A stretch of 64,000 nucleotides of DNA, taken from positions 35,487,318 to 35,551,317 of the forward strand of contig NC_069001.1 of the NCBI RefSeq assembly GCF_001194135.2, written 5' to 3'. The notes below the pieces were generated by a model. The model was given only the letters and a program-made list of their open reading frames with translations, made no database searches and was not told the DNA's origin. The translations under genes were made by a program, and so were the position numbers. This document shows positions 3,964 through 56,460 of the stretch, one piece after another (position 1 is the first letter of the stretch; each line of letters starts with the position of its first letter). Source of the DNA: Octopus bimaculoides. Taxonomy: Eukaryota.

Positions 3964-4009
3964 TATTTCTGAAAACCAGTGGATAGATTCCACTGAAATT
4001 AGATAAATA
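3964..4009 (+). ncRNA. decayed type-I hammerhead-like motif
   Basis: TATTT-CTGAAAA-CC-AGTGGA/TAGAT/TCCACT-GAAA-TTAG-AT-AAATA. Stems I and II pair, but G8 is A and the NUH site is broken. Confidence 0.4.
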
Positions 4010-4148
4010 ACCTTCGAACAGATAGTCAGCAGCGCCGCCTGGCTAGGGCTTGGCTGCTCTGCATTGACAAGGGGCAACACCCTGAAACTAGTCTGCAGAT
4101 GCCAAACCAGCAGGGGGACACTGCTGACCTACCCTGTTCGAAGGTTAT
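4007..4148 (+). mobile_element. 142-bp foldback element enclosing a hammerhead ribozyme
   Basis: ATAACCTTCGAACAG-A-TAG-TCAGCAG (4007-4032) is inverted to CTGCTGACCTACCCTGTTCGAAGGTTAT (4121-4148). Inner pairings are CTGG/CCAG and TTGGC/GCCAA. Confidence 0.7.
4058..4099 (+). ncRNA. minimal type-I hammerhead ribozyme, U3-A8 core variant, palindromic stem III
   Basis: Stem I TCTGCA/TGCAGA; core TTGACAA; stem II GGGG-CAACA-CCCT; GAAA; stem III ACTAGT palindrome; GUC triplet. Predicted cleavage is after C4093. Confidence 0.8.
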
Positions 4149-5150
4149 NNNNNNNNNNNNNNNNNNNNNNNNNNNNNNNNNNNNNNNNNNNNNNNNNNNN
4201 NNNNNNNNNNNNNNNNNNNNNNNNNNNNNNNNNNNNNNNNNNNNNNNNNNNNNNNNNNNNNNNNNNNNNNNNNNNNNNNNNNNNNNNNNNNNNNNNNNNN
4301 NNNNNNNNNNNNNNNNNNNNNNNNNNNNNNNNNNNNNNNNNNNNNNNNNNNNNNNNNNNNNNNNNNNNNNNNNNNNNNNNNNNNNNNNNNNNNNNNNNNN
4401 NNNNNNNNNNNNNNNNNNNNNNNNNNNNNNNNNNNNNNNNNNNNNNNNNNNNNNNNNNNNNNNNNNNNNNNNNNNNNNNNNNNNNNNNNNNNNNNNNNNN
4501 NNNNNNNNNNNNNNNNNNNNNNNNNNNNNNNNNNNNNNNNNNNNNNNNNNNNNNNNNNNNNNNNNNNNNNNNNNNNNNNNNNNNNNNNNNNNNNNNNNNN
4601 NNNNNNNNNNNNNNNNNNNNNNNNNNNNNNNNNNNNNNNNNNNNNNNNNNNNNNNNNNNNNNNNNNNNNNNNNNNNNNNNNNNNNNNNNNNNNNNNNNNN
4701 NNNNNNNNNNNNNNNNNNNNNNNNNNNNNNNNNNNNNNNNNNNNNNNNNNNNNNNNNNNNNNNNNNNNNNNNNNNNNNNNNNNNNNNNNNNNNNNNNNNN
4801 NNNNNNNNNNNNNNNNNNNNNNNNNNNNNNNNNNNNNNNNNNNNNNNNNNNNNNNNNNNNNNNNNNNNNNNNNNNNNNNNNNNNNNNNNNNNNNNNNNNN
4901 NNNNNNNNNNNNNNNNNNNNNNNNNNNNNNNNNNNNNNNNNNNNNNNNNNNNNNNNNNNNNNNNNNNNNNNNNNNNNNNNNNNNNNNNNNNNNNNNNNNN
5001 NNNNNNNNNNNNNNNNNNNNNNNNNNNNNAATTAATAAGTAAATGCACAATAAATTTTGATAAATTGAATTTAATTGAGATTTACCTGTAAATTTGGATT
5101 TTTATCCATCCCTGATATTATTATATATATAGATATACAGATAGAGAGAG

Positions 5151-5181
<31 letters not shown>

Positions 5182-5182
5182 C

Positions 5183-5348
5183 TCTCTGAGTGGTTGGCGT
5201 TAGGAAGGGCATCCAGCTGTAGAAACTCTGCCAAATTTAGATTGGAGCCTGGCGTTGCCATCCGGTTTCACCAGTCCTCAGTCAAGTCGTCCAACCCATG
5301 CTAGCATGGAAAGCGGACGTTAAACGATGATGATGATGATGATGATGA
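5183..5348 (+). mobile_element. SINE family D 3' part (RTE-like tail, (GAT)n end)
   Basis: TGGTTGGCGTTAGGAAGGGCATCCAGCTGTAGAAAC...CCAACCCATGCTAGCATGGAAAGCGGACGTTAAACGATGATG is nearly identical to 36560-36714. Confidence 0.85.
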
Positions 5349-5943
5349 TATATATACATATATATTTATATATATTTTCCTTATGTATGAAAATAACCTT
5401 TTAACCATCATACCACAATACCGTCTTTAGTTCTCCTCTTTATTATTAAGAAACACAACATGTTCGTTTTACAGAAAGACTTCATCAACTTCAGATCATG
5501 AAGCGATCACAGCTTGTGTATATCGTTGCAAAGACTGTCAAATGCATATTTAAACATTTCTCGCAATCAACTGTTTTCTATTGATTATCCCATTGATATT
5601 AGATTGCAGCTGGTGCAATGGTGCAGATATCTGAGATGAAATCCTATTTTCTTGTCAAAACATTGATGCTAGTTATCTCCATAGCGAAACCCCTCATCAC
5701 TTAAAAATAGGAATATATTTGATATGATGGCAAATGAGTCAGAAACTCCAGGTCTGTTTCAAACGCACACAGGCACACATATACACACATATACACATTC
5801 ACACAAAAGCACATGCATACATACACACACAAACACACAGACTTATGCATACACACAGCTGTACACATTACAAAACTATACCTTTTAGTCTTGAGTCATA
5901 AACACACATACATTTGTATGTGTATGTGTGTGTATGCATATAC

Positions 5944-5974
<31 letters not shown>

Positions 5975-6161
5975 TACATGCATATATATACATATATATG
6001 TATGTACATATATATATATATATACACATATATATACACACATATATATATATAGACATATATATATACATATATACACATATATATATATTCATACATA
6101 TATAATTATATATATGCATTTATGGCTCAACACTAATGCATTTAGATGTGTGTATATATGC

Positions 6162-6225
<64 letters not shown>

Positions 6226-6260
6226 NNNNNNNNNNTTTGTGTGTGTATATATGTGTGTGC

Positions 6261-6319
<59 letters not shown>

Positions 6320-6773
6320 TGTATGTATATGTATGCTTGTGTCTGTGTGTGTACTTATACATGACTATATTTATACAGACGTATAAATCAGTATTCCTAT
6401 ACATTCAGCATATGTATACACATACAGATACACATGCGCATACACACTCACACAAACACACACACATACTTAAAGCTGTATGTATATATTGATTTATACA
6501 GAGTTAACGAGTGCCACTTCACCACAAGATGGTTATAATTTCAATGACACAGCCTGTCACACCCTGGACAAATGTCCTCTATTCTAACCTTGAGATAACC
6601 AATATTTTACGAGTGAAATTTAATAGCCAAATGTGTGTGTGTGTGTGTGTGTGTGTCTGCTTGTGTGGGCATCTGTGTATGTTTGTTTGTGCGTGTGTCT
6701 CTGGGTATAACCGTGTTTATGCATATGACAGCATTAAAGTGCTCATTGCACTTTAATTATATTCAGGTACGTT

Positions 6774-6808
<35 letters not shown>

Positions 6809-6869
6809 ATATATATATANNNNNNNNNNNNNNNNGTGTGTGTATATGTATGTATGAAAGCATGCACGT

Positions 6870-7600
6870 AAGTAATTAAGTCTCTTGTCACTTTGATTAA
6901 TAGGGTTTAGCTAGACATAGCTACACAGCGCTCATAGCCCATATGGCTTCCTGTGTGCAGGATGAAAGCTGAAGACTTCCAGAAGCCCCGGCTACCTGTC
7001 CCTGTCACCACTTTTTCCGTCGCTACTGGACTTAAGGAGAAAGTGCAATGACATCGGAGCTGGTCTCTTGGTTTGCAGAACAACCTGTTGTGAGCCAGTC
7101 CTCCTCCTCCTCTCTCTCTCTCTTTCTCTCTCTCTCTCCGTCTCTCTCTCTCTCTCTCTGATTGTAAAGAGATGACTATCATTATCCCTCTCCCTCTCTC
7201 TCTCTCTGATTGTAAAGAGACGATTATTATTATCATTATTATTATTATTACTATTCTTGTACTTTAAACTTGTTCTTGTGTTCCACAATCTTCGTAGTTA
7301 CCAGGATGCAGGATTTGTATGAAGCAAGACAAGTCAAAGAGCTGAAGGAGACAAAGGGCTTATATGCCTTGGGTCTGATAGGGTGTCTGCGAGTGACTTC
7401 CTTATGGAGACAAGTCTGTCGCATGTTAATTTGCTAATTAACCCACAGATGGAACCTTGGCTGGTGCTACTATTCCATGTCATAATAGACCTGGGAACAA
7501 TAATGGCTAAGTTGTGGACCCACATTCCTCAAAAACTCCTGAACCAGTGCCCCCACAACTAGATGCAGTTTAAAGTCATAGCCATACATACTTTGTTTGT
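6870..7600 (-). pseudogene. decayed CR1/L2-like LINE reverse transcriptase, interrupted by microsatellite
   Basis: Minus-strand remnants in the expected RT order: LLMHKQSMYG (cf. LLHKLxxYG), STSQGSICG (cf. GVPQGSVLG), KSLADTL (cf. YADD) and HMGYER..RDLITY (cf. SYEERL..RGDLI). Confidence 0.5.
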
Positions 7601-7778
7601 GCATTAACAAGGTAACCAATGGTTTCATGTGAAAAGAACTTCCCAATTGTTTAAGCATGCCACATATCTATACACACACACACACACACACACATGCTTG
7701 TCATCAACCGTTACTTGTTTTTAGGAAAGACCAGCAAAAGTCACAGTTTGTAGCTCCATGCATGGTGACATGCTTCTG

Positions 7779-7810
<32 letters not shown>

Positions 7811-8496
7811 AATATGTAGAGGGTTTCATACAGTTTCTGTCTATCCAGTTGTCATCTCACAAGCTGTTACTTGATGGAAGTGATCCAGAAACCACACAAC
7901 CACATTTATTTGTTTAGTGTGTGTATGTGTGTGTGTGTGTGCCCAGATACACCACTACATACAGGCACCTAACAACACACACACACATGCACAACGAATG
8001 CACAGTCATGCATGCAGCATGGTACTACAATGTAATACCAAACTCTTTACAGCTGCCATGTTTGTCGCAGACAAATTCTACAACCGTTGCCTTTTCTTGG
8101 GATAATTTCATAAAATTGGAGGAACACTGCATGTGTGTGGGGAGTGAGGGTTGAGGGGGAGGATGTGATTGTCCTTTCTTTTTTGTTTCTTTCGGAATTA
8201 TTCCAAAAACTTGCAATTGTTGGTGGATTGCTTCTATTCCTGCGACTTGTTCTACTATATAGAGTGATGACAAGTCACTTCAAAGAATTCTTTTCGGAGG
8301 AAGGAAATACAAGGATAAAAAAAAAACAAAAATAAAAAAAAAATGGTACAGAAACGAAAACAGTTGTGGCAGCAGGGGTGGGGGTGGGTAAGAAAAGATT
8401 AAATAAATATATAAATAAAATGAGAATACTAAACAAAAATGTATTCTTCAAGAGAATTATGATTTCTGATCATATTTATTCATTTATTGTAGCGCT

Positions 8497-9252
8497 TTAT
8501 GTAACAGTATTTTGGTAATGAGGTTGGAGGGGAGTCAGGTGGTGGTGGTGGTGGTGAGAATGGTGATTGTGTTGGTGGTAGTGTTGGTAATGAAGGGGTG
8601 GTGGTGGTGGTTGTTGTTTCAGGGTGGTCATTGAAGCTAATGGTGGTTTTGTGGTGGCAGCGGTGGTGGTGTTGCTGGTTGTGGTGGTGGTAGCAGTGTT
8701 GCTGGTAACAGAGGCGACAACAGTGTAGGTTGTAGCTGTGGTGGTGGTGGTGATGGTGGTTGAGGCGATGGTGGTGGTTGTGATAGCTGTGGTAGTAGGT
8801 CTGACACTAACAGTCCTGGCTACAGTAGAGGTTGTAGTTGTGGTGGTAGCAGTGTTGCTAGTAACAGTGGTGACAACAGTGTAGGTTGTAACTGTGGTGA
8901 TGGTCATGAAGCTAATTGTAATTTGGTTGTTGTTGTTGTTGTGGTGGTGGTGGTGGTACTGGTAGCAATGGTTGTGGATGCTGTAGTTGATGATGGTGGT
9001 TGTGGTGATGGTGGTGGTTGTGATAGCTGTGGTAGTAGGTCTGACACTAACTGTCATGGCTACAGTAGAGGTAGTAGTAGTAGTAGTTGTGGTGGTGGTG
9101 GTGGTGGTGGTGGTTGTGTTAATACTTTTGATGGTAACAACAATGACTACAGTATAGGTACCAGCAGTTGAGGTGGTAATTGTGGCAATAGTGGTAATGG
9201 TGGTAGCATTAGGTGGTGATTGCAGAAAACACTGATTGCTGGTTGTTGCAGT
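8497..9252 (-). repeat. complex (ACC/ACA)-rich minisatellite, open as a Thr-rich mucin-like frame
   Basis: About 250 codons stop-to-stop. Repeated non-simple units: TVSVRPTTTAITT x2, TYTVV x3, VTSNTATT x2. Confidence 0.5.
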
Positions 9253-10062
9253 TTAGCTTCCCTTTCTTTTCTTTCTTTTTCTTTTTCTCTTTTCTTCTTG
9301 ATCTTATTAAGGTGGTCCTTGTTGTTGTTGTTGTAGTTGTCATCAGTTTGTCATTCTTTTTCTTTTTCTTTTCTTTTTCTGTTGTCGTCTTCAAATCTGT
9401 CTTTTTCTTGCTGTTTTCTTGCTCTTGGTGGAGAAGTTCAGCTTGGGTTATCATGGTTTGCGTTCTTTCTAATTTCCTTACTATTTTTTTTTTGTCCCCT
9501 TTTTTTTTTATTTGAGTTTTCATTGTTGATGTTTTTCGTGTACATTATTAGTTGTTATTGCTGTTGTTGTTGTTGTCATTGTTGTTCTCCTTCTTCCAAC
9601 AGATCTGGTGTCTTACCAGTTTTTCTTATTTTATTAACAAAAGATATAGAANNNNNNNNNNNNNNNNNNNNNNNNNNNNNNNNNNNNNNNNNNNNNNNNN
9701 NNNNNNNNNNNNNNNNNNNNNNNNNNNNNNNNNNNNNNNNNNNNNNNNNNNNNNNNNNNNNNNNNNNNNNNNNNNNNNNNNNNNNNNNNNNNNNNNNNNN
9801 NNNNNNNNNNNNNNNNNNNNNNNNNNNNNNNNNNNNNNNNNNNNNNNNNNNNNNNNNNNNNNNNNNNNNNNNNNNNNNNNNNNNNNNNNNNNNNNNNNNN
9901 NNNNNNNNNNNNNNNNNNNNNNNNNNNNNNNNNNNNNNNNNNNNNNNNNNNNNNNNNNNNNNNNNNNNNNNNNNNNNNNNNNNNNNNNNNNNNNNNNNNN
10001 NNNNNNNNNNNNNNNNNNNNNNNNNNNNNNNNNNNNNNNNNNNNNNNNNNNNNNNNNNNNNC

Positions 10063-10104
<42 letters not shown>

Positions 10105-10179
10105 GTGCATATCCATATATATCTAGATATGCAGTCATGTGTATTTACACACACAAAATACACATATATAAATACATAC

Positions 10180-10213
<34 letters not shown>

Positions 10214-10349
10214 GCATATACATGTTTATTTACACATTCACACACATAAGAGAGGAAGAGAGAGAGAGAGAGAGAGAGAAGCGGACATGAAATTACAATG
10301 CAAAGACCTAAGTCACCATGTTGTGATTGTAAAGAGATGACTATTATTA

Positions 10350-10392
<43 letters not shown>

Positions 10393-10919: not shown

Positions 10920-10950
<31 letters not shown>

Positions 10951-10954
10951 TTAA

Positions 10955-11010
<56 letters not shown>

Positions 11011-11825: not shown

Positions 11826-12150
11826 CCTGTGTGGTAAGAAGCTTGATTCCCAACCACTTGGTTCCAGGCTCAGTCCCTCTGCATGGCACCTTGGGCAAGT
11901 GTCTTCCACTATGACCTCAAGCCGACTAAAGCCTTGTGAGTGGATTTGGTAGATGGAAACTGAAAAGAAGCCTGTTGGGTATATATATATANNNNNNNNN
12001 NNNNNNNNNNNNNNNNNNNNNNNNNNNNNNNNNNNNNNNNNNNNNNNNNNNNNNNNNNNNNNNNNNNNNNNNCACACACACACGTGTGTGTGTGTGTGTG
12101 TCTTTTCGTCAGTGTTTGTCTCCCCATCACTGCTTGACAACTGGTGTTGG
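11826..12150 (+). mobile_element. SINE family A with an assembly gap in its internal microsatellite
   Basis: The head and CCTTGGGCAAGTGTCTT segment lie before the gap at 11992-12072. TGCTTGACAACTGGTGTTGG resumes after it. A family D tail follows at 12165-12275. Confidence 0.85.
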
Positions 12151-12841: not shown

Positions 12842-12880
<39 letters not shown>

Positions 12881-13530: not shown

Positions 13531-13583
<53 letters not shown>

Positions 13584-14100: not shown

Positions 14101-14132
<32 letters not shown>

Positions 14133-14137
<5 letters not shown>

Positions 14138-14421: not shown

Positions 14422-14489
14422 TTTTTACATTATACATGTATATATATGGTTCAAAATTGTCCAAAAAAACAAAAGACAGAGGCAGGTAA

Positions 14490-14640
14490 GGGAGCAACAA
14501 ACAAGTGAGATCAGTTTGACGCTCAGGGGAAAAGGAAAAAGTTTTTGATGTTTCAAACCTATGCTCTTCTACAAAAAGGAATGAGGAGAGAAAAAAACAG
14601 ATGGGGAGAAGAAAAAATGGAGAGAAATAAAACGTGTCTA
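14490..14640 (-). mobile_element. Penelope-like terminus with a decayed hammerhead motif (about 14541-14580)
   Basis: Diverged homologue of 22196-22395. The minus strand reads TTTTGTAGA-A-GAG-CATAGG-TTT-GAAAC-ATC-AAAAA. Confidence 0.55.
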
Positions 14641-15549: not shown

Positions 15550-15593
<44 letters not shown>

Positions 15594-15599
15594 GCAGAC

Positions 15600-15856: not shown

Positions 15857-16470
15857 TTGTATGTGTCCCTCACCCACCCCACAGCCTTCGTTTCACAAAA
15901 GAGCCCCCCAAAAAATAATGTCATTACACATTTGAAAATGTCTCGACATTCAAATCTTGAAATCAACTTTAATCATTGCTTATTTTCTTAAAATTCCAAA
16001 GCTTATATTACATGTAATTCCAACGATTTTTACTCAACCAAACCGTTAGACAATGCACCGTTTTCCAAGAGAACTGGGCCATTCTTACAGGTTCTTTACC
16101 ACCCAACAACACTATTATTATTTTTATTATTATCATTTGTATTTTTCACTATTATTTTCATGTATCCCATTGTAGCAAAGGTTTAACTTATCACTAAATT
16201 ATGCTGTCTATCAAACCCCGCTCCTTGTCTCCCATTTGCTGTTTTCCTATTGTCATGTTTTGGGGAGGCTTTTTTTTATTTTCGTTTATCTCTCAAAAAA
16301 GTGCTATTATTGCAAAATACAGTGTGTTTCATAATAATGGAACATATTTAAGTACAAGTACTTCGCCTTGAAACAAGTACATCTAAGAAAAAGATTGCAT
16401 AAATGGAGATGCAGTTTTTTGTCAATGAATAGGTCGCAACTTGGAGTGACAAAAATGTTGATGCCATATA

Positions 16471-16620
16471 AGTGCAGGCATGGCTGTGTGGTTAGTAGCT
16501 TGCTTCCCAACCACATGGTCCTGGGTTCAGTTCAACTGTGTAGCACGTTGGACAAGTGTCTTCTACTATGATGTCAGGGTGACCAAAGTCCTGTGAATGG
16601 ATTTGGTAGATGGAAACTAC
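16471..16620 (+). mobile_element. SINE family A, 5' part
   Basis: GCAGGCATGGCTGTGTGGTT...CTTCCCAACCACATGG...GGATTTGGTAGATGGAAAC. Confidence 0.85.
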
Positions 16621-17159
16621 CATCTGGATTTTGGTAGATGTGTTTGTATGTATATGCTTATATGTGTGTGTTTATTGCATGTAGGTATACTCTTCTGCAT
16701 CAGTAATGCAATCGTATTTAAATCCCTCCTCATCACATTTCAGTGACTAAGTTTGCACACACACACACACACCTACACACACACACCTACACACACACAC
16801 ACCTACACATGCACACGCACATACATGCATCTGCTTTGAGTAATTCTTGTCATCCCCTGATATCAGTCGTGGCTATTCTCGCTTTACTCCTCTCTCACTC
16901 TCTTTTCCTCTTTCTCTTTTTCTCTCTTTCTCTCTTTCTCTTTCCTTCTCTCTATCTCTTTCTTTCTTTCTCTCTCCATTGCTTGCTCTCAGTCTCTCTC
17001 CCTCTCCCTCTCTCATTCTCCCTGTCAAAAACTGAAGCAGTGAATAATAAGAAGAAGAAAACGAAGAAGAAGAAAACGAAGAAGAAGAAGAAGAAAACGA
17101 AGAAGAAAAAACGAAGAAGAAAACGAAGAAAAAAACGAAGAAGAAGAAGAAGAAAAAAA

Positions 17160-17191
<32 letters not shown>

Positions 17192-17288
17192 ACAACAACC
17201 ACCACCATCACCATCATCATCATCGTGCCAAGGAATTCTATTGTTTTCTGTTTTTGACATTTTCTTAATGCAATTCTTGCAACTCAAG

Positions 17289-17410
17289 GATTTATTATAT
17301 TCTGTCCTGAAGGAGAGATTGAGAAAGTCAGGAGTTTCTTGAAACGATTCAAGCGGAATCTTCGTGAACAGCAAATTGAATTGATGACAGGGCTTTCGGA
17401 TGGCCGACTG
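17289..17410 (+). CDS. candidate coding exon, unknown protein
   Basis: A T-rich tract and CAAG acceptor, then an open frame (x)FIIFCPEGEIEKVRSFLKRFKRNLREQQIELMTGLSDGRL, then a GTATGG donor. Non-repetitive and CpG-containing. No homology recognised. Confidence 0.35.
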
Positions 17411-17685
17411 GTATGGTAGAAATAGCAGCCAAATCCCTTTATATGATGCCTCAGCTTTCTTGAAAAGAATGGAAGGTACTATTGGGTGGTACCTTGTAGG
17501 AGACGAATCTGATTGGTTAATCAGTCTTTTAGAAATAGCAGCCGAAACACCCTTAGATCGTATCTCAACTGTCTATCATAGGTGGGAAAATATCAATGGA
17601 TGGTACCACGAAACTATGAGAAAATCTTTTCCTTGTTATTCACTGTATTAGAAATAGCAGCTAAAACTCCCTCAAATCATGCGTC

Positions 17686-17729
17686 TTTGATGATGACAAT
17701 GATGATGATAACGATGATGACAATGATGA

Positions 17730-17760
<31 letters not shown>

Positions 17761-17991
17761 GATGATGATGATGATGACAATGATGATGACAATGATGATG
17801 ACGATGATGACGATGATGATGATGATGATGATGATGACAATGATGATGATGATGATGATGATGACGACAATGATGATAACGATGATGACAATGATGATGA
17901 CGATGATGACGATGATGATGATGATGACGATGATGATGATGATGACGATGATGATGATGACGATGATGATGATGACGATGATGATGATGAC

Positions 17992-18022
<31 letters not shown>

Positions 18023-18103
18023 GTGGTGGTGGCGATGATGATGATGGTGGTGGTGGCGATGATGATGATGATGGTGATGATGATGATGATGATGATGATG
18101 TTG
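17686..18103. repeat. long imperfect (GAT)n microsatellite
   Basis: About 415 bp of GAT with GAC/AAT/AAC/GGT variants. Confidence 0.95.
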
Positions 18104-19284
18104 ACTGTGTGTCAGAAACGTAATAGTTATGAATTAGTGCCATTGTCTTACTAGCAGTTTCTTCTGTTTCCAGTCTTCAGGGTAAACATGTTCAGCCATG
18201 GGGAAATATTACCTTCCTTGGAAACAAGTGGGGGATGACGATTGGAATGGCATCTGGGCTACAGAGAATATGCTTCAATGAATTCTGTCAAATTCATGCA
18301 AGCATAGAAAAGTGGAGATTAAAACAATGATGATGATGCGATATGAATGGATGAACGAATGAATAAATGAATGAATGAACGAACAAATGAATGAAAGAAT
18401 GAGCGATGATAGTCTCTTGTAGTCTGAGAAGAATGGTTCTGCAGTTTTTTGTTGAACATCCTGCAACAGATGATTTGCTATGCTTTAACTCACTCCCCTC
18501 CATCAAATAAACATTACCTGAACATGGCCACGGTGTACCACATGTGAGGTGTCGCACTGATCACAGAACAGCACGAGAGGGAGAGTTTTGCTCAAAGACA
18601 CAACATACCACCCAGTCTGGAAATTGAACTCACAACCTCATGGTCCTGAATCCTGCTCTCTAACCACTCGGCTATGCGCCACCATGGTAATGAAATATAA
18701 TCAGAGAAAAAGTGCTGTTTTAAAAAGATCTCATCTGGTTGAGAAATTAATTTTTTCAAATCATTAATGTCCATTTTTCTCTTAGTTTTTCTAGGTGTTT
18801 TTTTTTGGTGGGGGGGGGTTTCTATCTTTTCTGTAATTCCATTCAGTCGAGAGGGTTTTACAGTTTCAAATTGATTAATCGTTTTTTATTATGAATATGT
18901 CAAATTTTTTTTAACACAAGAGTTTTGTTTATTTTTCACCATTTCTCTTTAATTCTATATCTTTTTTTAAATTTCTACCAAATGAAATAAATACTTGCCA
19001 TTAAAATTCTTTATGTCGCAGACTATAGTCTTCCATTTAGTTTCCCCACCAAAATAAAAAAAAAAAACCTTCCATTTCTGCATAGCAATCAAATCTTCCG
19101 GCGGATGGTAAAAAAAAAATGCAAAACTACTTTTAATTCATCTTGCATAAATTATCCAGCATTCCATTAAGTAGAAAGGTGGAAGACATCTATTTTTATG
19201 GATTTCTTTATTTATTTAATCATTTATTTATTTATTCATTTATTTATGCTGCATTTTAGTTTTTATTTAATGAGTTTTATTCAC

Positions 19285-20076: not shown

Positions 20077-21115
20077 TTCGCTCAGAATATAGGCAAAAGC
20101 TAAATGGTACAACTGAATGTATGGATTTTGTAGATGTGGTGATGGGGGAAAATCAAAATAACTGAATAATTTCTAAATTACTTATGTATTTGTGTGTTTA
20201 TTTATCTATCTATTTAATTAATTAATTCATCATTTTAGTTATATAACAAATTTTATTTATGAGAGAGAAAGAGATATAACAAGTGAGAGAGAGAGAGAGA
20301 AAGCCAGGCATAATCTCTACCTCAAAGTAACTTATACCAAACCTTCCACAAGTCTTAGTCAAACATCCATCTCATTAGGTGATCCTCTATGCATTAACAA
20401 ACAGCTTTCAGCCTATTGCAAAACTTGCAGCAGTCAAGAAATTATTCAAGAAAAAACATACTGGAAAGTAATTTTCCCCACAGCAAACTACAATTACTTA
20501 CTTTCTGTCTTTGATTCTATTTTCTTTTCTTTTTTTCTTTTCCTAATTACTTAAGGTTCTATTCTCCGAAGCTACTCCTTCAAAACGTACTTTATTTGCC
20601 TGGTTCTTGTCATTCTAATGATGATTGATGTGAATGAGTCGTAACAAATATCTCCAGATTTTCGTGTTGGTTTTCACCAATTCCTTAATTTCTTCGGAAG
20701 ATGTTTTTCTTTGCAATGTAAATATAATCTCGTCTCCTTTTTCTTTTTATATTTATTTTATTCTGTTTTTTTTTTCTTTATTTTTAAATCTGATTTGTCA
20801 ACAAGTCGAGGAGGAATGGATAATGCTTGTAGACAATTTTTAGATCATCTGGATGGATTTAGGCGATAGGGATCACCTAACATAACTAATGGGATTTATA
20901 GCACTTATTTATTTTGAATCATTGAAGCTATATGGCAGATTGAAAACAGGAAGAATATATATGTTTGTGTGTATGTTTATATATGTACTTGCATAGCAAG
21001 CGACCTGATCTGAGATCGTGTGCTGGAACGAAAACAATTGCAGTGTGGAAGGTGTTTATAAGCGATTTAAGAAACACACAAAAACCGTTAGATTCATTTC
21101 AACATTTAAATTTAA

Positions 21116-21166
21116 TTTGCCGAAATATTTTCGTTGCTTTGAGACCGCAACCTGTTCACTGACAAA
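21116..21166 (-). ncRNA. type-I hammerhead-like motif, G3-C8 core (left arm)
   Basis: Minus strand: TTTGTCA-GTGAACA-G-GTTGC/GGTCTCAAA/GCAAC-GAA-AATATT-T-CGGCAAA. Confidence 0.55.
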
Positions 21167-21188
21167 ATTCCGTGCTGCATCATGGAAT

Positions 21189-21239
21189 TTTGTCAGTGAA
21201 CAGGTCGCAGTCTCAAAGCGACGAAAATATTTTGGCAAA
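21189..21239 (+). ncRNA. type-I hammerhead-like motif, G3-C8 core (right arm)
   Basis: Stem I TTTGTCA/TGGCAAA; core GTGAACA plus an extra G; stem II GTCGC/GCGAC; GAA; palindromic stem III AATATT; UUU triplet. Confidence 0.6.
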
Positions 21240-22051
21240 TTAAATTTAAATGTTGAAGTGAATCTAATGGTTTTTGTGTGTTTCTTAAATGGCTTATAAA
21301 CACCTTCCAGGCTGCAGTTGTTTTATATATAGATATATACACAAACAAAAAAAACACACAACACAGACACACACATACACATACACACAGTCATACACAC
21401 ACCCATATATATGTATGTGTATGTAATGTATATAGGGGAGATTGTGAGTAAGAAAGGATTTTCATGGATGTAATTGTGTAAAAAATAAGCAGAAAAAATA
21501 AAAGATATAAACCATTTCTGTGCCTGGTCCTTTTATCCAGATTTGAGTAACCACTGTTAATCTTGTTGAGTTGGTTACCAATGCAAAACTCCAATGATTC
21601 AACAGAAAAAATTCGAAGCCATTATTAGCCTAAAATATCCTTTGTTTTTGTTTGTTTTTATTCATTAGACTTTACCCTCACCTGATTAATGACAATTTAA
21701 ATATGACTAAATGACAGAAATTGTAAAGATTTATGATGAAAACCTGAGCAATATGCTTATGGATTGTGTATTCTACAGGATGTCAAAGACATAAATAGCT
21801 TCCAGATCATATAAACATATATACTCACTATCACACACACACACACACAGATATATATACATATATGCACACACACACACACGCTGTGTGTGTGTGTCTG
21901 TGTTATTCCTTCAACCCAATTCAGTCACATGGCTGATGTTTACCCCAAGTTATTGTAGAAGACACTGACCCAAGGTGTCATATGGTGAAACCACATTGTT
22001 TGGAAGCAAACGTTATAACCACACAGCCAAGTTAATGCTTATGTATATGTC

Positions 22052-22195: not shown

Positions 22196-22395
22196 ATATA
22201 TATATGGGAGAATATACGAAAAAACAACAACAGACGAGGACAGGTGGTGCAAATAACAAAAGGATGTATTAGTATGACGCTCGGGAATACGGAAAGTCTT
22301 TGACGTTTCGAGCTACGCTCTTCAACAGAAAGAATACGGAGACAAGGAGAAAAACACGGAGAAAAAAAATTGAATAGTGTCCAGTCAACGGTCAT
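22196..22395 (-). mobile_element. Penelope-like terminus (pseudo-LTR fragment)
   Basis: TA-flanked and CpG-rich. Contains GACGTTTCGAG and the hammerhead motif at 22297-22333. A homologue lies at 14490-14640. Confidence 0.7.
22297..22333 (-). ncRNA. minimal dimer-type hammerhead motif, A6U variant
   Basis: Minus strand: TCTTT-CTGTTGA-A-GAG/CGTAG/CTC-GAA-ACGT-C-AAAGA. Stem III is a loopless ACGU palindrome and the triplet is GUC. Confidence 0.7.
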
Positions 22396-23097
22396 TTGTA
22401 TATATATGTATATGTATGCATTTGTTTATATTTGCTTATATATGCATGTGCATATATTTTTTATGCCTATGTAGTTGTGTGTAGATATATATATATAAAC
22501 ATATATATATATTTACCCTTGTTTATTATATTTATGCCACTGTGTGTGTGTGTGCATGTGTGTGAAAGAGGAAAGAAGGAAGTGAAAGAGAAGAGATGTA
22601 TTATGCAGTTGATATCTTGTTGGATCTTGTCACATGATATCTGTAACACCCAACATATTATATGTATACCATTATTTTGGTATTATCTATTGTATCTTTG
22701 AAATTCCTTTTCCAGTACACACACACACACACACACATAGATATCTGCATATATACATACAGACACACTCACACACACATACATATATACACATACATAC
22801 ACACGTGTGTGTATTTCGTTTTTGTGATGAAAATCTCACTTGACTTTCTTTTACTTTTACAGCAATTGTAAATAACTCATAAAGGGCCTGTTTTCTTCCC
22901 CACCCCCTATCCCGGCCCCAGCCATCATTCATTCTTCTAAATTCACTGCATCAAGATAAAAAAAAAATATCAGGGCTGTTTTGGGTAAACACTATTTACA
23001 TGCATCACAAATTCTAAATAATTATTTTTATTGAAGTCAGCAAAATAAATAGATAACTAAATAAATAATAATAATAATGATGATGATGATGAAGATG

Positions 23098-51854: not shown

Positions 51855-52330
51855 TAGCAGCCATAGCTCTGTGGTTAACAAGTTCATAACCACATGGTTT
51901 TTAGGTTCAGTCCCATTGTGTGGTACCTTAGGCAAGTATCATCTGCCATAGCCTGGAAGTACCCAAACTTTGTGCATAGATTTTAGTTGATGGAAACTGA
52001 AGGAAGCCTCTTGTGAATGTATGTTTATGTCTATGCACATGTATATGTATGTGTGTGTGAGTGCTTATGTTTCCTTGCCTTCAGATCAAGCAACAGTTAT
52101 AAAAGAGTGCCGCTGCCATACAAACGAATACAAATGATGATATCATCCATTGCTAATCTTCCATGAAAGCATGTTCTGCCCGAGGTAATATTTCTTAACA
52201 TAGAAACAGGTGAGGGTTATCGACAGGAAGAGCATCCAGCTGTAAAAAAAAATTCCACTTCAACGAATTCTGTATAAACCATGCAAGAGTATAAAACAGA
52301 GTGTTTCATATGAGAACAACAATGATGATG
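51855..52330 (+). mobile_element. composite SINE: family A head, internal microsatellite, D-like tail
   Basis: GGTTCAGTCCCATTGTGTGGTACCTTAGGCAAG, later CAGGAAGAGCATCCAGCTGTA and (GAT)n. The tail resembles 18170-18340. Confidence 0.65.
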
Positions 52331-52669
52331 ATGATGATCTACACACAATCATCATCATCATTATCATGTGGTAGCCTACATGTGCTAACTTATATAGCCT
52401 CTCATGAAGTACACAGTCATGTGACTGATCATGTTTCCATGTTCTTGTCATGCTACCTCACATCTTAAGTTATTTTGATAATGTAAAACTCAGTATTACA
52501 ATTTGAAAAGCTTCGGTTGATGTTGCCAGTGAAATATATATGCTCTACTTTATTTATTGAGTACTTTTTTTGCTATTTGTAAATATAAATGTTCTTCACC
52601 AATGTATGCATGTATGTAAACATAAGCGTATATGTTTGCATGTGTATGAATGTATGCGCTTGTGTGTAT

Positions 52670-52719
<50 letters not shown>

Positions 52720-52754
52720 AACTGAACATTCAGTAACAGGAAACTATAATAATT

Positions 52755-52781
52755 TCATTTATTTTTATTTTTCAGGTAAGT
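52755..52781 (+). promoter_or_regulatory. candidate recursive splice site (acceptor fused to donor)
   Basis: TCATTTATTTTTATTTTTCAG|GTAAGT, with the AG/GT junction at 52775/52776. Confidence 0.35.
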
Positions 52782-53943
52782 ACAAATTGATTCAACACTT
52801 CACTGAACTCCAGTTGAATAAGCAACCATTGTGAATGATTCTTAAAAATATTTCCAGCTGAATGACGATAAAAGCCTGTTTCTCCCATTCACTAACAGGT
52901 TAGTTACTTAACTGTCTCCCATACAATAGTTTCCAAGATAAACCATACACAATGATGTTTTTCCCTTTTCTTCATTTCTTTCTCTCTTACCTCCTCTCTC
53001 TCTGTTTATCTATCTATCTATCTATCTAGCTCTCTCTTTAACAATATTAGTCTAAGGTTATAAAGTTTTGTTGTTCATCTTTCAGACAAGGTGGTGCTTG
53101 GTGAATTGTAGGTCTAGTTATATCTAGAGACAAGTCCCTTCCCCTTTTTGTTTGTTGTATAAATATTGTAGTTTTATTTACAAAGAGCTACTGGAGATCG
53201 TTATCTTCCCTCTTATATTCTCACACCATTTTTATTTTCTTACTGATCCACCTTTAGCGTCACACTTGGGTAAGCACGAACAATCATCTTTTCAGCATCC
53301 AAACAATATTTAGGTCCGTTTGAATACAATCTGAAACATACTTATGCTATTTGTGGACCTGAAATAGAAATTTTCTTTTCAGCTTGTTAATTTGTTTTAC
53401 AAACCACTATATCTACCAAATACTTCCTTAAATTTTTCCTGGTCAGTCCTTACAACAACAATATTGTCTTTTGTATTGCAGGAACAAAATGCAAAATGTT
53501 GCTTTCGTGCTGGAAGCAACCTGTCATGTCATATATATTTCATTCTTGTTGAAATCATTTCTCATTCTATTTACCATCTTGCTTTGGGAAAAGTTAAACA
53601 TCTAAGTTGATTTGGATGAGATTTTAAACCAAAGTATTTCTCAACTTGAAAATGATTGCCATGTTTTTTTCTGTTTTTGCTTTTTTTTTTTTTTTTTTTT
53701 TTTTTTTGGCAAATTCATTTAAAACTAAAGATGTTACTATCTAGAGCAAAGTTGTAAAATATAGTCAGTGATGTATATATAATGCTTAGTAGTATTTATT
53801 TCTTGCTAAACACTGAAGCATTGAATTAATTAGATTATGTAAATTCAACAAACACTGTGTAATTAATCCTACCAGTTAATTTGTCAAAACACATCTATGT
53901 TTTATAAAGCATAAAATATCAAATATGTATTTTTCATATTTTA

Positions 53944-53984
<41 letters not shown>

Positions 53985-54021
53985 AGCAATGAATTCCGGG
54001 TAGAGGTAGNNNNNNNNNNCT

Positions 54022-54066
<45 letters not shown>

Positions 54067-54869
54067 GGAGAGACATTCTGGAGGGGCTTGGGGATTAAGA
54101 GCTATGCAAGTTTCCAGATTAGGCAACACTACATCATACCAAAAGCACCACCCCCATCGTCTCTCTTCTAAAGTAAAGATCCAATTATTGAATGATGTTA
54201 CATGACATTAATCAGTCGTAGTTATATCTCCATTGGGACGTTCAATATTGATAACAACTTTAAGATGAAGGAAAAACACTTTGGTTTAAACTGACATGGT
54301 GGTCGATATTGGTTTGATATGAGGTTGTGTGACTTTGTGGTTATTAAGCTGAGCTCACAATCCAAAGGCTGTGAGTTCAAATCCTGTTCTGGGGAATATG
54401 TTGTATTTTTGAGCAAGACGTACCCTTTCACATTGCTTTAGTCTTCTCAGATGAAAACAACAATCAGATCAGCTTTCTCTCTGTCTCTAGTTATTGCATC
54501 ATTGGGGTAAGAGAGCCAAGAAGGTGTCTATGGCTGCCACTGGTTGCTTGGGTAACAAAAAAGACTTTACAAAACACAAGACAGATCATAATTAGAGCAA
54601 AACACATCATTTCATGTTGTTCCACTCTACTCAGCTGTAAAAACCAACCAAGCTCTACTGCAGTCCCACATGTCTCCCTCATGTTCTGCTTTGTCAGTGG
54701 GCAAGAGGGTTGATAAGATGTCTTATTCTGCTCCAGACTACAATCTCAGTACCAGTTTCTTCTGTCTGCTCTCAAACACATTGGGCAGCAAGTTGACTCC
54801 ACTGGTTTCTGTCGACAAATCCTGACAAGAAGCAACTTTGCCTTTCAATCTATTGGCATTAGTTGATAT

Positions 54870-55270
54870 CAGTCCTTTTGCTGTTCTTCTGCATATTGGG
54901 GCAGCAAGTTGTTGCCACTAGTTTCTGTTGACTATAGTTTTCTCTACATCCAGTCATGTGATATTAGTTTTTCTGATGTCAGTTATGAATGTTCTGTGTT
55001 ACACAGCTTTCTGTCTTCCTCTCTTTCTTTTCCCCTCCAATGGTGTCAGTTTGAAATCTGTTTTAAAATGGTATTGTTCTGGTGGCCAGAGTATGCGACT
55101 GGCTAATTTTAATCTTTGTACTGTAATGAGTGGTCTTGTGCTGGCTGTTTTTAGAATGTCTTCAATGGTTATGCAGTCTTGTCAGTACTTTCCCAGAATC
55201 CTTCTAAAAGAACCTTCGATGGGACACATCTAGCTCTCTGTTGATTTTCATGGTGTTCAAAACTACATAC
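54870..55270 (-). pseudogene. RTE-clade LINE 3' fragment
   Basis: SFRRILGKY*QDCITIEDILKTAS..QRLKLASRIL..TPLEGKRKRGRQK..TDIRK..NRN*WQQL matches the RTE C-terminus, with in-frame stops. Confidence 0.8.
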
Positions 55271-56113
55271 ATAGCTAAAGCATTGCCGAAATACAAAACA
55301 GATCCTAATTAGAAGTTTCTCATTAGTGAAACATAACATAAAGTCTTTGATATTTTCCGAACTCATTAAAGTATGCATGCAATTATGTTTATTTCTATTT
55401 ATATATTTATTGATGTTCATTTCAGAACTGTAAATCAATAGTTTAGTTTAAAAAGAAGATAAAAACAAGATGGAAAACCCTAAATATTTGACACACTATT
55501 TCTAAAGTAACAGACTTGTTAAGACCTGGGACTGACATGTTGCTTTATTAAGTTTCACATATTGTAAACTAACAAACTCTGGTATATCTGTGACTGACAT
55601 TTCATTTTATTAGCATCTTGTCAGTAAATACCTCCCTCTCTCTTCGGTCCATTATCCCTTTCCTCGCTTCCCCCACCATGCCAAACATTTCGGAATGACA
55701 TCAGTGTAGTATTTCAATAGAAAGTCTATAACAGATATCTATTTCTGTCAGATCTACATTCTTACATTCATTAAATATTCAGTGAGTCTTAATTGTGTCA
55801 TTTCAATGCTAATTTTGCCAAAGTTTTGTTATTCCATTTCCAGAAGTGTTTTGCTATGTATTTCAGGTCTGTAGGCATATTAAATCAAATATTTTTTTCC
55901 TTTTTCTTTTAGTCAGCTATTAGAATGTTGTATACAAGAACCTGGTTTTTAGCTAGACCCACCAGACAATGTACTTAATAGCTTATACACTGTCCAAGGT
56001 TATATGAAACACTTTACTTTATACAAACCCTTACCTAATCCCACCCCACTGCATGTCACTAACCTAAACTCTGGCCCTGATTTTCTGAAACATTTTTAAT
56101 TTTAAAAAAACTA

Positions 56114-56282
56114 TAGGTGCAGGCATGGGTGTGTGATAAGAAGTTTGATTCCTGACTTCATAGTTCTGGGTTCAGTCCCACTGAATGGCACCTTGGGCGA
56201 GTGTCTTCTACAAAGCTTCAGGCAGACCAAAGCTTTGTGAGTGGAATTGGTTGACAGAAACTGAAAGAAGCCCATCGTATAT
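56114..56282 (+). mobile_element. SINE family A, 5' part
   Basis: GGGTTCAGTCCCACTGAATGGCACCTTGGGCGAGTGTCTTCTAC...GAAACTGAAAGAAGCCCATCG. Confidence 0.85.
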
Positions 56283-56413
56283 GTTGGTGTTGTATGCATT
56301 GTTAATCCTAGATATATATATAAGGCAAGACAGTCATGCTTGGAATGTCTTTGAACATACTCACTTAAGAATGGCTTGAAGTTAAATAGTATCTAAGGGC
56401 CTTCATGCAATGG

Positions 56414-56460
56414 CTGAAGAGGCCTTGTCTAGGTTGGAAACAGAATAGCTGTCTAAGCAC
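56414..56460 (+). ncRNA. possible decayed hammerhead motif
   Basis: CTGAAGA-GGCCT/TGTCT/AGGTT-G-GAA-ACAG/AATAG/CTGT-C. The core, stem III and GUC are present, but stem I does not pair. Confidence 0.35.

What the first reader, a model, noticed from the sequence alone, without database searches (positions are those of the whole stretch)
3964..56460. About eight hammerhead-ribozyme motifs with four different catalytic cores in one 64-kb window
Seen: type-I HHR-shaped motifs at 3964(+), 4058(+), 14541(-), 21116(-), 21189(+), 22297(-), 39425(-) and 56414(+). They belong to at least five sequence-unrelated carriers. The cores are TTGACAA (U3-A8), GTGAACA (G3-C8), CTGTTGA (A6U), and canonical CTGATGA or CTGAAGA. 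Established: positions 3 and 8 form a Watson-Crick tertiary pair in active HHRs, and Penelope-like elements carry minimal HHRs with palindromic stem III that cleave as dimers. Inference: this genome hosts a diversified, high-copy population of Penelope- or retrozyme-like self-cleaving RNAs. A search for canonical CUGANGA would miss about half of them. Minimal HHRs as such are known; the co-occurring covariant cores are the part that may be new.
Basis: partly seen in the sequence, partly recalled or inferred. Interest (0 to 1): 0.85.

Follow-up and report, generated by a model that had tools for sequence, protein, structure and literature searches.

The report
Minimal hammerhead ribozyme relics in octopus DNA
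This stretch of octopus DNA holds several relics of small self-cleaving hammerhead RNA motifs of the kind carried by Penelope-like jumping genes, and one family swaps a key catalytic-core base pair in a way I did not find reported from nature.

Summary
No motif spans an assembly gap.

- **Beyond chance:** 4058(+), with a U3-A8 core, and the mirrored pair 21189(+)/21116(-), with a G3-C8 core, are complete minimal type-I hammerhead shapes. Chance predicts 0.001-0.02 such hits per window.
- **New copy:** I found a third, diverged copy of the 21189 family at 16414-16470(+). Its core is A3-U8, a double change that keeps the 3-8 pair.
- **One family, U at position 6:** 22297(-) and 14541(-) are two copies, 69% identical, and both carry U6.
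- **Partial:** 39425(-) lacks helix II. 56414(+) lacks helix I.
- **Chance level:** 3964(+).

The shapes match the minimal hammerheads of Penelope-like elements. They share the palindromic helix III, the bulged base after A9, G10.1-C11.1 and the opposite-strand pairing. Two carriers abut (TA)n runs. The window has no reverse-transcriptase ORF and no Rfam hit.

Natural U3-A8 cores were already published in 2011 and 2014. I found no report of natural G3-C8 or A3-U8 cores. Copy number, family consensus and cleavage could not be tested, because no other octopus DNA was reachable.

The parts
4058..4099 (+). Motif A: a complete minimal type-I hammerhead shape. Helix I is 6 bp, the core is UUGACAA (U3-A8), helix II is GGGG/CCCU, followed by GAAA. 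Helix III is the palindrome ACUAGU. C17 is at 4093, so the predicted cut lies between 4093 and 4094.
   Evidence: Sequence. Descriptor hit with score 13. Shuffles predict 0.0013-0.02 such hits per window.
4009..4146 (+). Carrier of A: an imperfect palindrome that extends helix I into a rod of about 60 bp, with the hammerhead at its tip. It ends about 2 nt before the assembly gap at 4149.
   Evidence: The RNA fold gives -73.4 kcal/mol with z = -7.4. It is a single copy in the window.
21031..21324 (.). Carrier of B: a head-to-head palindrome of two 147-bp arms that are about 92% identical and symmetric to the centre. Each arm reads outwards as hammerhead plus a tail of about 92 nt ending in GTTGTTTT. 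The right end abuts a (TA)n run.
   Evidence: The sub-threshold Rfam MIR6140 hit (80 bits against a cut-off of 140) only reflects the long hairpin.
21189..21239 (+). Motif B+: a complete minimal hammerhead shape. Helix I is 7 bp, the core is GUGAACA (G3-C8), with a bulged G at 21203. Helix II is GUCGC/GCGAC, followed by GAAA. Helix III is the palindrome AAUAUU and U17 is at 21232.
   Evidence: Score 15. Shuffles predict at most 0.007 such hits per window.
21116..21166 (-). Motif B-: the mirror copy of B+. The stem II pair C-G is replaced by U-A, a compensatory change. An A.C mismatch lies at the helix I base (positions 2.1-1.1).
16414..16470 (+). Motif B3, not in the finding: a diverged third copy of the B-family hammerhead segment. 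Its core is AUGAAUA (A3-U8). Helix II is kept through a G.U pair and helix III is kept as the wobble palindrome AAUGUU. It is damaged by G12 to A (a CpG transition), a 1-nt insertion near position 17, and a helix I reduced to 5 of 7 pairs. A SINE-like repeat follows directly.
   Evidence: Pattern match with 0 mismatches. nhmmer E = 0.016. Alignment and pair counts. SINE-like repeat.
22297..22333 (-). Motif C: a hammerhead shape with core CUGUUGA (U at position 6). It has a bulged A, the G10.1-C11.1 pair, the helix III palindrome ACGU, C17 and a 5-bp helix I. It lies in a repeat of about 190 bp (about 22206-22398) flanked by (TA)n runs, with a GTTGTTTT box 73-80 nt downstream.
   Evidence: The chance expectation for its class is 0.045 per window.
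14542..14577 (-). Motif C2: a decayed paralogue of C, 69% identical over about 185 bp. Its core is UUGUAGA (U3.G8, U6). The helix I pair C-G is replaced by U-A. Helix II is kept through G.U pairs. The helix III palindrome is lost (ACAU).
   Evidence: nhmmer E = 0.0017.
39425..39469 (-). Motif D: a partial hammerhead with canonical CUGAUGA and GAAA. Helix I is 6 bp (AUUCUA/UAGAAU) and helix III is the quasi-palindrome AUGCACAU. No helix II can be drawn. A GTTGTTTT box lies 57-64 nt downstream.
   Evidence: (class expectation 0.015).
56414..56453 (+). Motif E: a partial hammerhead with CUGAAGA, helix II GGCC/GGUU, an extra G before GAAA, and a 4-bp helix III hairpin (ACAG/CUGU). It has no helix I.
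   Evidence: (class expectation 0.03).
3964..4009 (+). Rejected candidate: a 7-bp hairpin (CAGUGGA/UCCACUG) between A-rich stretches. The core reads CUGAAAA, so G8 is missing.
   Evidence: The class expectation is 0.30 per window, and a second hit of the same quality lies at 36779.

Best explanation
The window comes from an Octopus genome. It contains relics of short retroelement pieces that each carry a minimal type-I hammerhead ribozyme of the kind described in the terminal repeats of Penelope-like elements (PLEs).

**Mechanism (inferred from the family).** Helices I and II form within one RNA. Helix III is only a 4-6 nt palindrome that cannot fold back on itself. The active three-way junction therefore needs two copies paired through their palindromes, for example two units in a tandem or multimeric transcript. 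Cleavage after position 17 would then cut unit-length RNA out of that transcript.

**Core variation.** The tertiary 3-8 pair is kept but its letters vary. It is U-A in motif A, G-C and A-U within the single B family, and C-G in C, D and E.

**Insertion.** The carriers look like 5'-truncated 3' ends, made of the hammerhead plus about 90 nt. They are inserted into (TA)n microsatellites, and one of them is a head-to-head inverted pair.

**Shown here:** the shapes, their improbability by chance, the structure-preserving differences between copies, and the flanks.

**Inferred:** the PLE origin, dimeric cleavage and past activity. The present solitary copies are probably inactive. B3 has lost G12, C and C2 have U6, D lacks helix II and E lacks helix I.
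For: 1. Motifs A and B are complete shapes that chance does not produce. Shuffles predict 0.0013 hits per window or 0.02, against 2 observed. Only 2 of about 40 structure-only loci carry the hammerhead letters.
2. The three B-family copies keep U4, G5, A6, A9, A13, A14 and A15.1. Every change in helix II, helix III and the 3-8 pair preserves pairing: 3-8 G-C to A-U, stem II C-G to U-A, plus two changes to G.U. Overall 93.8% of cells are paired, against 24-60% in slid controls.
3. C and C2 keep helix I by a compensatory C-G to U-A change and keep helix II by G.U pairs.
4. These are a base between positions 9 and 10.1 (B, C, D), the G10.1-C11.1 pair (B, C), palindromic positions 15.2-16.2, and dual motifs on opposite strands.
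5. The B right end, the C 5' end and the C2 3' end lie 0-1 nt from (TA)n runs, whereas only 4% of the window lies within 5 nt of one. PLEs show a microsatellite or AT-rich target bias and inverted 5'-truncated copies.
6. A GTTGTTTT box lies 57-92 nt downstream of the cut site in B, C and D. It occurs only 11 times in the window on both strands.
7. A G3-C8 core is known to cleave. [quoted passage not shown]
Against: - No reverse transcriptase or GIY-YIG ORF and no Pfam hit was found in the window.
- No Rfam hammerhead model matches, even at E <= 10 on 100-200 nt stretches.
- Each family has only two or three copies here, and B+ and B- are not independent. In the pair-count shuffles, 52 of 500 reach the observed covariation.
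- The class-specific chance figures for C, D and E were fitted after seeing the candidates.
- The GTTGTTTT box was chosen by eye and is T-rich.
- The A carrier is a rod with the hammerhead at its tip, which is not the usual picture of a PLE terminal repeat.
- Published PLE minimal hammerheads cleave poorly in vitro. Cleavage was not needed for PLE insertion in vitro.
Confidence: 0.65

Rival explanations
1. These are non-LTR retrozymes: non-coding tandem repeats that are transcribed, self-cleave and circularise into small rod-like circular RNAs. On this view they are not fragments of coding Penelope-like elements. It applies above all to motif A.
For: Motif A sits at the tip of a rod of about 140 nt with z = -7.4. 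The rod ends about 2 nt before an assembly gap, as an unassemblable tandem array might. Animal retrozymes carry type-I hammerheads with short palindromic helix III. They are now argued to derive from PLE terminal repeats, so the two readings overlap.
Against: No second unit of any carrier lies in direct orientation in the window. B is an inverted pair, not a tandem pair. C and C2 are dispersed single copies flanked by (TA)n. Nothing similar follows the gap at 5030.
Confidence: 0.2
2. There are no ribozymes here. A and B are fold-back or MITE-like DNA palindromes, and the rest are chance matches in AT-rich, repeat-rich DNA. The hammerhead letters are incidental.
For: Both A and B lie inside long DNA palindromes whose arms pair by Watson-Crick pairs only, so the fold would be equally good on the other strand. 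Rfam finds no hammerhead. At relaxed thresholds the shuffles give as many hits as the real sequence: 3.8 expected against 6 observed at score >= 7. 3964 is at chance level.
Against: The core letters are the point. Of about 40 real loci with the same helices, only A and B carry UGA..A and GAAA in register, where about 0.001 is expected. The independent copy B3 keeps those letters and changes positions 3 and 8 together. No target-site duplication flanks B.
Confidence: 0.08

Closest known systems
Minimal hammerhead ribozymes (min-HHR) in the pseudo-LTRs of Penelope-like elements (Cervera and de la Pena 2014, PMC4209133; Lunse, Weinberg and Breaker 2016, not readable here)
   Same: Both are type-I motifs. 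Helix III is reduced to a palindrome, so an active fold needs a dimer. Both have an unpaired base between positions 9 and 10.1, the G10.1-C11.1 pair and short helices I and II. Most copies are solitary and highly variable, and dual motifs occur on opposite strands. A U3-A8 core variant is already described there, with about 1,300 hits in Schistosoma mansoni.
   Different: No PLE ORF or pseudo-LTR is present in the window. One family here uses G3-C8 and A3-U8 cores, which I did not find reported as natural. Another family has U at position 6. Motif A has G10.1.U11.1 and no bulge, and sits at the tip of a 140-nt rod.
Natural hammerhead core variants (Perreault et al. 2011, PMC3088659) and engineered 3-8 swaps (Martick and Scott 2006 as cited in PMC11167929; PMC3884650)
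   Same: A C3-G8 to U3-A8 covariation occurs in nature. The C3G/G8C double mutant partly restores cleavage, including in the Anolis PLE hammerhead. A natural A6C variant cleaves slowly.
   Different: In those papers G3-C8 is a laboratory construct. Here it is a genomic family with two G3-C8 copies and one A3-U8 copy. The G3-C8 copies have U17 rather than C17. This fits the reported trapping of position 17 by a complementary base at position 3. That link is my inference.
Metazoan non-LTR retrozymes (Cervera and de la Pena 2020, PMC7229834; Li et al. 2026 preprint)
   Same: They are type-I hammerheads with weak palindromic helix III in non-coding, AT-rich repeats. They form strongly self-paired RNAs and are proposed derivatives of PLE terminal repeats.
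   Different: Retrozymes are tandem arrays of 170-400 bp units. No tandem arrangement is visible here.
Rfam Hammerhead_1 (RF00163) and related models
   Same: They share the same catalytic core and three-helix junction. The giant squid genome has 235 Hammerhead_1 hits.
   Different: None of the motifs here reaches even E = 10 against any Rfam hammerhead model. They have no hairpin helix III and half have non-consensus positions 3 and 8.

Membership tests
Hammerhead ribozyme (any type) | The invariant core: U4 G5 A6, A9, G12 A13 A14, the A15.1-U16.1 pair, and position 17 not G | tested here: met
   Met in A, B+, B- and D. Also met in E, apart from an inserted G before G12. Not met in C and C2 (U6), B3 (A12) or 3964 (A8 with C3).
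Hammerhead ribozyme (any type) | Positions 3 and 8 form a Watson-Crick pair | tested here: met
   The pair is U-A in A, G-C in B+ and B-, A-U in B3, and C-G in C, D and E. Within the B family the two positions change together.
Hammerhead ribozyme (any type) | Three helices around the core | tested here: inconclusive
   Helices I and II are present in A, B and C. Helix III exists only as a 4-6 nt palindrome that needs a second copy. D lacks helix II and E lacks helix I.
Hammerhead ribozyme (any type) | A match to the curated Rfam covariance models at the gathering score | tested here: not met
   There are 0 hits at gathering score. No hammerhead family appears at E <= 10 on 101- and 199-nt stretches around C and A. 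None is among the 150 listed hits of the whole-window E-value scan.
Hammerhead ribozyme (any type) | Site-specific self-cleavage giving 2',3'-cyclic phosphate and 5'-OH ends | not testable with these tools
   This needs in vitro transcription or RNA-end sequencing.
Penelope-like-element minimal hammerhead | Helix III replaced by palindromic positions 15.2-16.2 (dimer architecture) | tested here: met
   The palindromes are ACUAGU (A), AAUAUU (B), AAUGUU with wobble pairs (B3) and ACGU (C). D has the quasi-palindrome AUG..CAU.
Penelope-like-element minimal hammerhead | [quoted passage not shown] | tested here: met
   B has a bulged G with G-C, and C has a bulged A with G-C. D has the bulged A only. 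A has no clear bulge and a G.U pair. The feature is defined and the sequences are.
Penelope-like-element minimal hammerhead | Located in the pseudo-LTR of an element encoding a reverse transcriptase and a GIY-YIG endonuclease | tested here: not met
   There is no such ORF among the 44 ORFs of at least 110 aa or the 292 open frames of at least 55 aa. Ten selected ORFs gave no Pfam hit. The source paper states that most genomic copies are solitary, so this lowers the membership claim but does not exclude it.
Penelope-like-element minimal hammerhead | Consensus families within a genome, rich in compensatory changes | tested here: inconclusive
   Only three B copies and two C copies are available. 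Three double changes preserve pairs: 3-8 and stem II in B, and helix I in C. The shuffle control is weak, with 52 of 500 shuffles reaching the observed value. A genome-wide test was impossible.
Penelope-like-element insertion signature | 5'-truncated copies, inverted head-to-head pairs, a microsatellite or AT-rich target, and a 30-40 bp tail at one end | tested here: inconclusive
   B is a head-to-head pair of 147-bp arms. Its right end lies on a (TA)n run. Its left end is followed by about 45-69 nt of unique sequence before a TA/CA microsatellite. C is flanked by (TA)n on both sides. This is consistent, but single loci cannot define element ends.
Non-LTR retrozyme | Tandem repeats of 170-400 bp, each with a type-I hammerhead | tested here: not met
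   No direct repeat of any carrier occurs in the window. For A this is undecidable, because its carrier ends about 2 nt before the gap at 4149.

The most novel reading that the evidence does not exclude
Octopus retroelement hammerheads, and perhaps those of other invertebrates, use any Watson-Crick pair at core positions 3-8. One family switches between G3-C8 and A3-U8. Such ribozymes would have escaped every survey built on CUGANGA or on Rfam models. If so, animal hammerhead counts are underestimates. Penelope-like clades reported to 'lack canonical hammerheads' and to target (TA)n, such as the Naiads, which survive as remnants in cephalopods, might in fact carry non-canonical-core hammerheads.
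Probability: 0.3. Interest if true: 0.6.

Novelty: new member of a known kind. Interest (0 to 1): 0.42.

Why it matters
- **Direct evolutionary support.** The 3-8 tertiary pair was established by crystallography and by laboratory double mutants. A natural family in which positions 3 and 8 change together, G-C to A-U, would be direct evolutionary evidence that the pair is what selection sees.
- **Blind spot in detection.** Descriptor- and Rfam-based censuses miss a sizeable share of animal hammerheads. In this window six of the eight credible motifs lack CUGANGA, and none reaches an Rfam threshold.
- **A concrete test.** It gives a way to check whether 'hammerhead-less' Penelope-like clades really lack the ribozyme.
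- **What is ordinary.** Minimal dimeric hammerheads scattered through invertebrate genomes, including U3-A8 variants, have been known since 2011-2014. The copies seen here are mostly damaged relics.

Tried and rejected
- **Rfam.** The gathering scan gave nothing. The whole-window E-value scan was swamped by microsatellite and hairpin matches to miRNA models. Two local E-value scans showed no hammerhead family.
- **Other genomic copies through spurious ORFs.** The 93-aa frame across the B palindrome found no protein sharing words with it. I ran no further search on A or C, because octopus DNA is evidently represented only by UniRef gene models.
- **Pattern scans of public collections.** The B and C motifs in JGI metagenomes, A in IMG/VR and B in GTDB genomes all gave 0 hits. 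None of these collections is expected to hold cephalopod DNA.
- **Papers not held.** Lunse et al. 2016 (PMC5785218) and the supplements of the two key PLE papers are not held. I could not check their variant lists or any octopus PLE consensus sequences.
- **Covariance model from the three B copies.** It recovers only those copies. C appears at E = 8 and A not at all. The model is too sequence-specific to serve as a cross-family test.
- **Dimer folding with RNAcofold.** It gives trivial domain-swapped duplexes and says nothing about helix III.
- **Alternative registers.** I tried other registers for the C core, to avoid U6, and for B, to obtain C3-G8. They break helix II or helix I, so I rejected them.
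- **B as a MITE.** I found no target-site duplication.

Full report
**Context and gaps**

The window is AT-rich (24-37% G+C) and full of (TA)n and (CA)n microsatellites and SINE-like repeats. It has 14 runs of N. An ORF fragment at 43134-43466(-) is 79-90% identical to many Octopus bimaculoides proteins, so the DNA is from an octopus or a close relative.

None of the eight listed motifs contains or spans a gap. Only the carrier of 4058 (its rod ends at 4146, the gap starts at 4149) and the far 3' flank of 56414 (gap at 56645) are cut. The operators' question about continuity therefore does not affect the motifs.

**Library search**

Rfam gives no match at gathering scores. The whole-window E-value scan is dominated by microsatellites and one long hairpin matching miRNA models. 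Local scans of 101 and 199 nt around 22297 and 3964-4148 list no hammerhead family even at E <= 10. This was expected for motifs without a hairpin helix III and with changed positions 3 and 8. It still means that curated models give no support.

**Anatomy**

- **A, 4058-4099(+):** UCUGCA | UUGACAA | GGGG-CAACA-CCCU | GAAA | (A)CUAGU | C17 | UGCAGA.
- **B+, 21189-21239(+):** UUUGUCA | GUGAACA | G | GUCGC-AGUCUCAAA-GCGAC | GAAA | (A)AUAUU | U17 | UGGCAAA.
- **B-, 21116-21166(-):** the same with GUUGC/GCAAC in helix II and C at position 1.1.
- **C, 22297-22333(-):** UCUUU | CUGUUGA | A | GAGC-GUA-GCUC | GAAA | (A)CGU | C17 | AAAGA.
- **C2, 14542-14577(-):** the same family, with core UUGUAGA, helix II GAGC/GUUU, ACAU in place of the palindrome, and helix I UUUUU/AAAAA.
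- **D, 39425-39469(-):** AUUCUA | CUGAUGA | 14 nt that form no helix | GAAA | (A)UGCACAU | C17 | UAGAAU.
- **E, 56414-56453(+):** CUGAAGA | GGCC-UUGUCUA-GGUU | extra G | GAAA | (A)CAG-AAUAG-CUGU | C17, with no helix I.
- **3964-4009(+):** reads CUGAAAA, then two spare bases, a 6-7 bp hairpin, GAAA and a non-palindromic AUUAGAU. G8 is absent.

**Chance**

- A descriptor was used for a minimal type-I hammerhead: any Watson-Crick 3-8 pair, a 0-1 nt bulge, GAAA, and a palindromic helix III of 4, 6 or 8 nt. It finds exactly A (6+4+3 pairs) and B+ (7+5+3 pairs).
- 1500 dinucleotide shuffles give 0.0013 hits per window at the score of A. A looser scoring scheme separates them clearly: scores 15 and 13, with the next best at 8. 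It gives 0.02 and 0.007 expected hits.
- Real DNA has more hairpins than shuffles, so I also counted loci in the real window with the same helices but any core letters. There are about 40 outside simple repeats, and only A and B+ carry the hammerhead letters, where about 0.001 would be expected.
- At relaxed thresholds the real window is not clearly enriched: 6 hits against 3.8 expected at score >= 7. C and 3964 therefore cannot be accepted on the descriptor alone.
- Class-specific expectations, fitted after the fact, are 0.045 (C), 0.015 (D), 0.03 (E) and 0.30 (3964) per window. As a group C, D and E exceed chance. Taken singly each remains uncertain. 3964 is rejected.

**Family evidence inside the window**

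- B+ and B- are the two arms of one palindrome (21031-21324). The arms are 147 bp and about 92% identical. One of their four differences in the motif is a compensatory C-G to U-A change in helix II.
- A SINE survey turned up a third copy, B3, at 16414-16470(+). It matches TTGTCANTGAANAGGTYGC with 0 mismatches and nhmmer gives E = 0.016.
- The B3 core is AUGAAUA. Position 3 changed from G to A and position 8 from C to U. Both are non-CpG transitions, while U4, G5, A6, A7 and A9 are unchanged.
- In B3, helix II keeps pairing through a G.U pair and the helix III palindrome becomes the wobble palindrome AAUGUU.
- B3 is nevertheless damaged. G12 has become A by a CpG transition, there is an insertion near position 17, and helix I has 5 of 7 pairs.
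- Over the three copies 93.8% of cells pair. Two pairs show changes on both sides. Slid controls give 24-60% paired and no double changes. With three sequences the shuffle control is weak, as 52 of 500 shuffles reach the observed value.
- I read the pattern as variation that arose under selection in active source elements, followed by CpG-type decay after insertion. That reading is an inference.
- C and C2 are 69% identical over about 185 bp. Helix I is kept by a C-G to U-A change and helix II by two G.U pairs.
- Both C and C2 have U at position 6, so U6 predates their split.
- A6 substitutions are strongly deleterious. This rests on established mutagenesis, from my own knowledge, and on the slow natural A6C variant. 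The C family is therefore either a crippled lineage or not a working ribozyme.

**Carriers**

- A, B, C, D and E share no detectable similarity.
- A sits at the tip of an imperfect palindrome of about 140 nt (fold -73.4 kcal/mol, z = -7.4) that stops about 2 nt before the gap.
- Each B arm reads outwards from the centre as hammerhead plus 92 nt. It ends in GTTGTTTT, directly on a (TA)n run on the right. On the left about 45-69 nt of unique sequence precede a microsatellite.
- C is bounded by (TA)n on both sides, with 95 nt from the cut site to its 3' end. C2 ends 1 nt from a (TA)n run. Only 4% of the window lies within 5 nt of such a run.
- GTTGTTTT occurs 11 times in the window on both strands. 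Three of these lie 57-92 nt downstream of the cut sites of B+, C and D. The tails align weakly. I chose this box by eye, so it is only suggestive.
- No ORF resembles a reverse transcriptase or an endonuclease.

**Comparison with the literature**

- Cervera and de la Pena (2014) defined minimal hammerheads in the pseudo-LTRs of Penelope-like elements. They described a palindromic 15.2-16.2, a base between positions 9 and 10.1, a conserved G10.1-C11.1, and mostly solitary and very variable copies.
- The same paper reported pairs on opposite strands, low activity and only as dimers, and a U3-A8 covariant with about 1,300 hits in Schistosoma.
- Perreault et al. (2011) had already seen natural U3-A8.
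- PLEs insert with 5' truncation, inverted copies, one-sided 30-40 bp tails and a bias for microsatellites or AT-rich DNA.
- G3-C8 appears in what I could read only as an engineered variant that partly restores cleavage. The single search hit for 'G3-C8' with 'hammerhead' is such a construct.
- Hammerhead_1 hits are reported in the giant squid genome.
- Naiad PLEs are said to lack canonical hammerheads, to prefer (TA)n, and to persist in cephalopods as remnants.

**Verdict**

I add a fourth motif of the same family.
- It is plausible for the C family and for D and E as decayed relics.
- It is wrong for 3964.
- The Penelope or retrozyme interpretation fits the anatomy. It is not shown directly, because the window has no coding element and no tandem array.
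- The kind of element is known, and so is the U3-A8 core.
- Possibly new is a natural family with G3-C8 and A3-U8 cores. With it, all four Watson-Crick pairs occur at positions 3-8 within 64 kb.
- Family-wide conservation, copy number and catalysis remain untested.

Noticed in passing
window 43134-43466 (-): This is an open frame of 111 aa with the pattern RPDIIL...LIDMTVP.D.N...KY.DLEIE. It has 320 homologues, and the best are 79-90% identical Octopus bimaculoides 'uncharacterized proteins'. Others at about 55-65% identity come from many marine-invertebrate assemblies, and no Pfam family matches. It looks like the C-terminal part of a widespread retroelement protein. One UniRef homologue at 78% identity is labelled Escherichia coli (UPI00321971E2), which suggests contamination or mislabelling in that public record.
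   Followed up: partly
window 16468-16560 (+), 2306-2382 (-), 63408-63493 (+), 56112-56205 (+), 11827-11903 (+), 25254-25309 (-), 34740-34793 (-), 48361-48410 (-): A SINE-like repeat (GCAGGCATGGCTGTGTGGTTAG...CCACATGGTCCTGGGTTCAGT) has at least eight copies at 77-87% identity. One copy starts exactly where the B3 hammerhead relic ends. Another lies 200 nt upstream of motif E.
   Followed up: partly
window 27380-27520 (+), 33194-33315 (-), 32920-33042 (+), 41419-41546 (-), 41155-41291 (-), 40885-40985 (-), 43659-43734 (+): A second SINE-like family has a tRNA-like T-arm box (GAGTTCAAATTCCGCCGAGGTCGACTTTGCC). It has seven or more copies at 75-92% identity, several clustered at 40.9-41.5 kb next to the gap at 41920.
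   Followed up: no
window 2172-2245, 5916-6315, 26204-26274, 28401-28480 and many more: In the E-value scan, all of the 150 listed Rfam matches (of 355) are to miRNA families such as mir-297, mir-3149, mir-466 and mir-1277. They fall on (TA)n, (TG)n and (CA)n microsatellites and are artefacts of low complexity. All are below gathering scores.
   Followed up: yes
window 17582-18154 and 16722-17374: Long trinucleotide-type simple repeats read as poly-Met/Thr, poly-Ser or Lys/Arg/Gln-rich open frames of 140-200 aa on both strands. They are not genes.
   Followed up: no
window 21232 versus 4093 and 22302: The cleavage-site base is U in both G3-C8 motifs but C in the U3-A8 and C3-G8 motifs. A C17 could pair with G3 and trap an inactive fold, by analogy with the C3-G17 trap discussed in PMC3884650. 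The U17 may therefore be a coupled adaptation. With one family this is only a hint.
   Followed up: no
window 3977-3999 (+): A 7-bp hairpin (CAGUGGA-UAGAU-UCCACUG) lies directly upstream of the rod that carries motif A. It is the basis of the rejected 3964 candidate. Whether it belongs to the same element cannot be told from one copy.
   Followed up: partly
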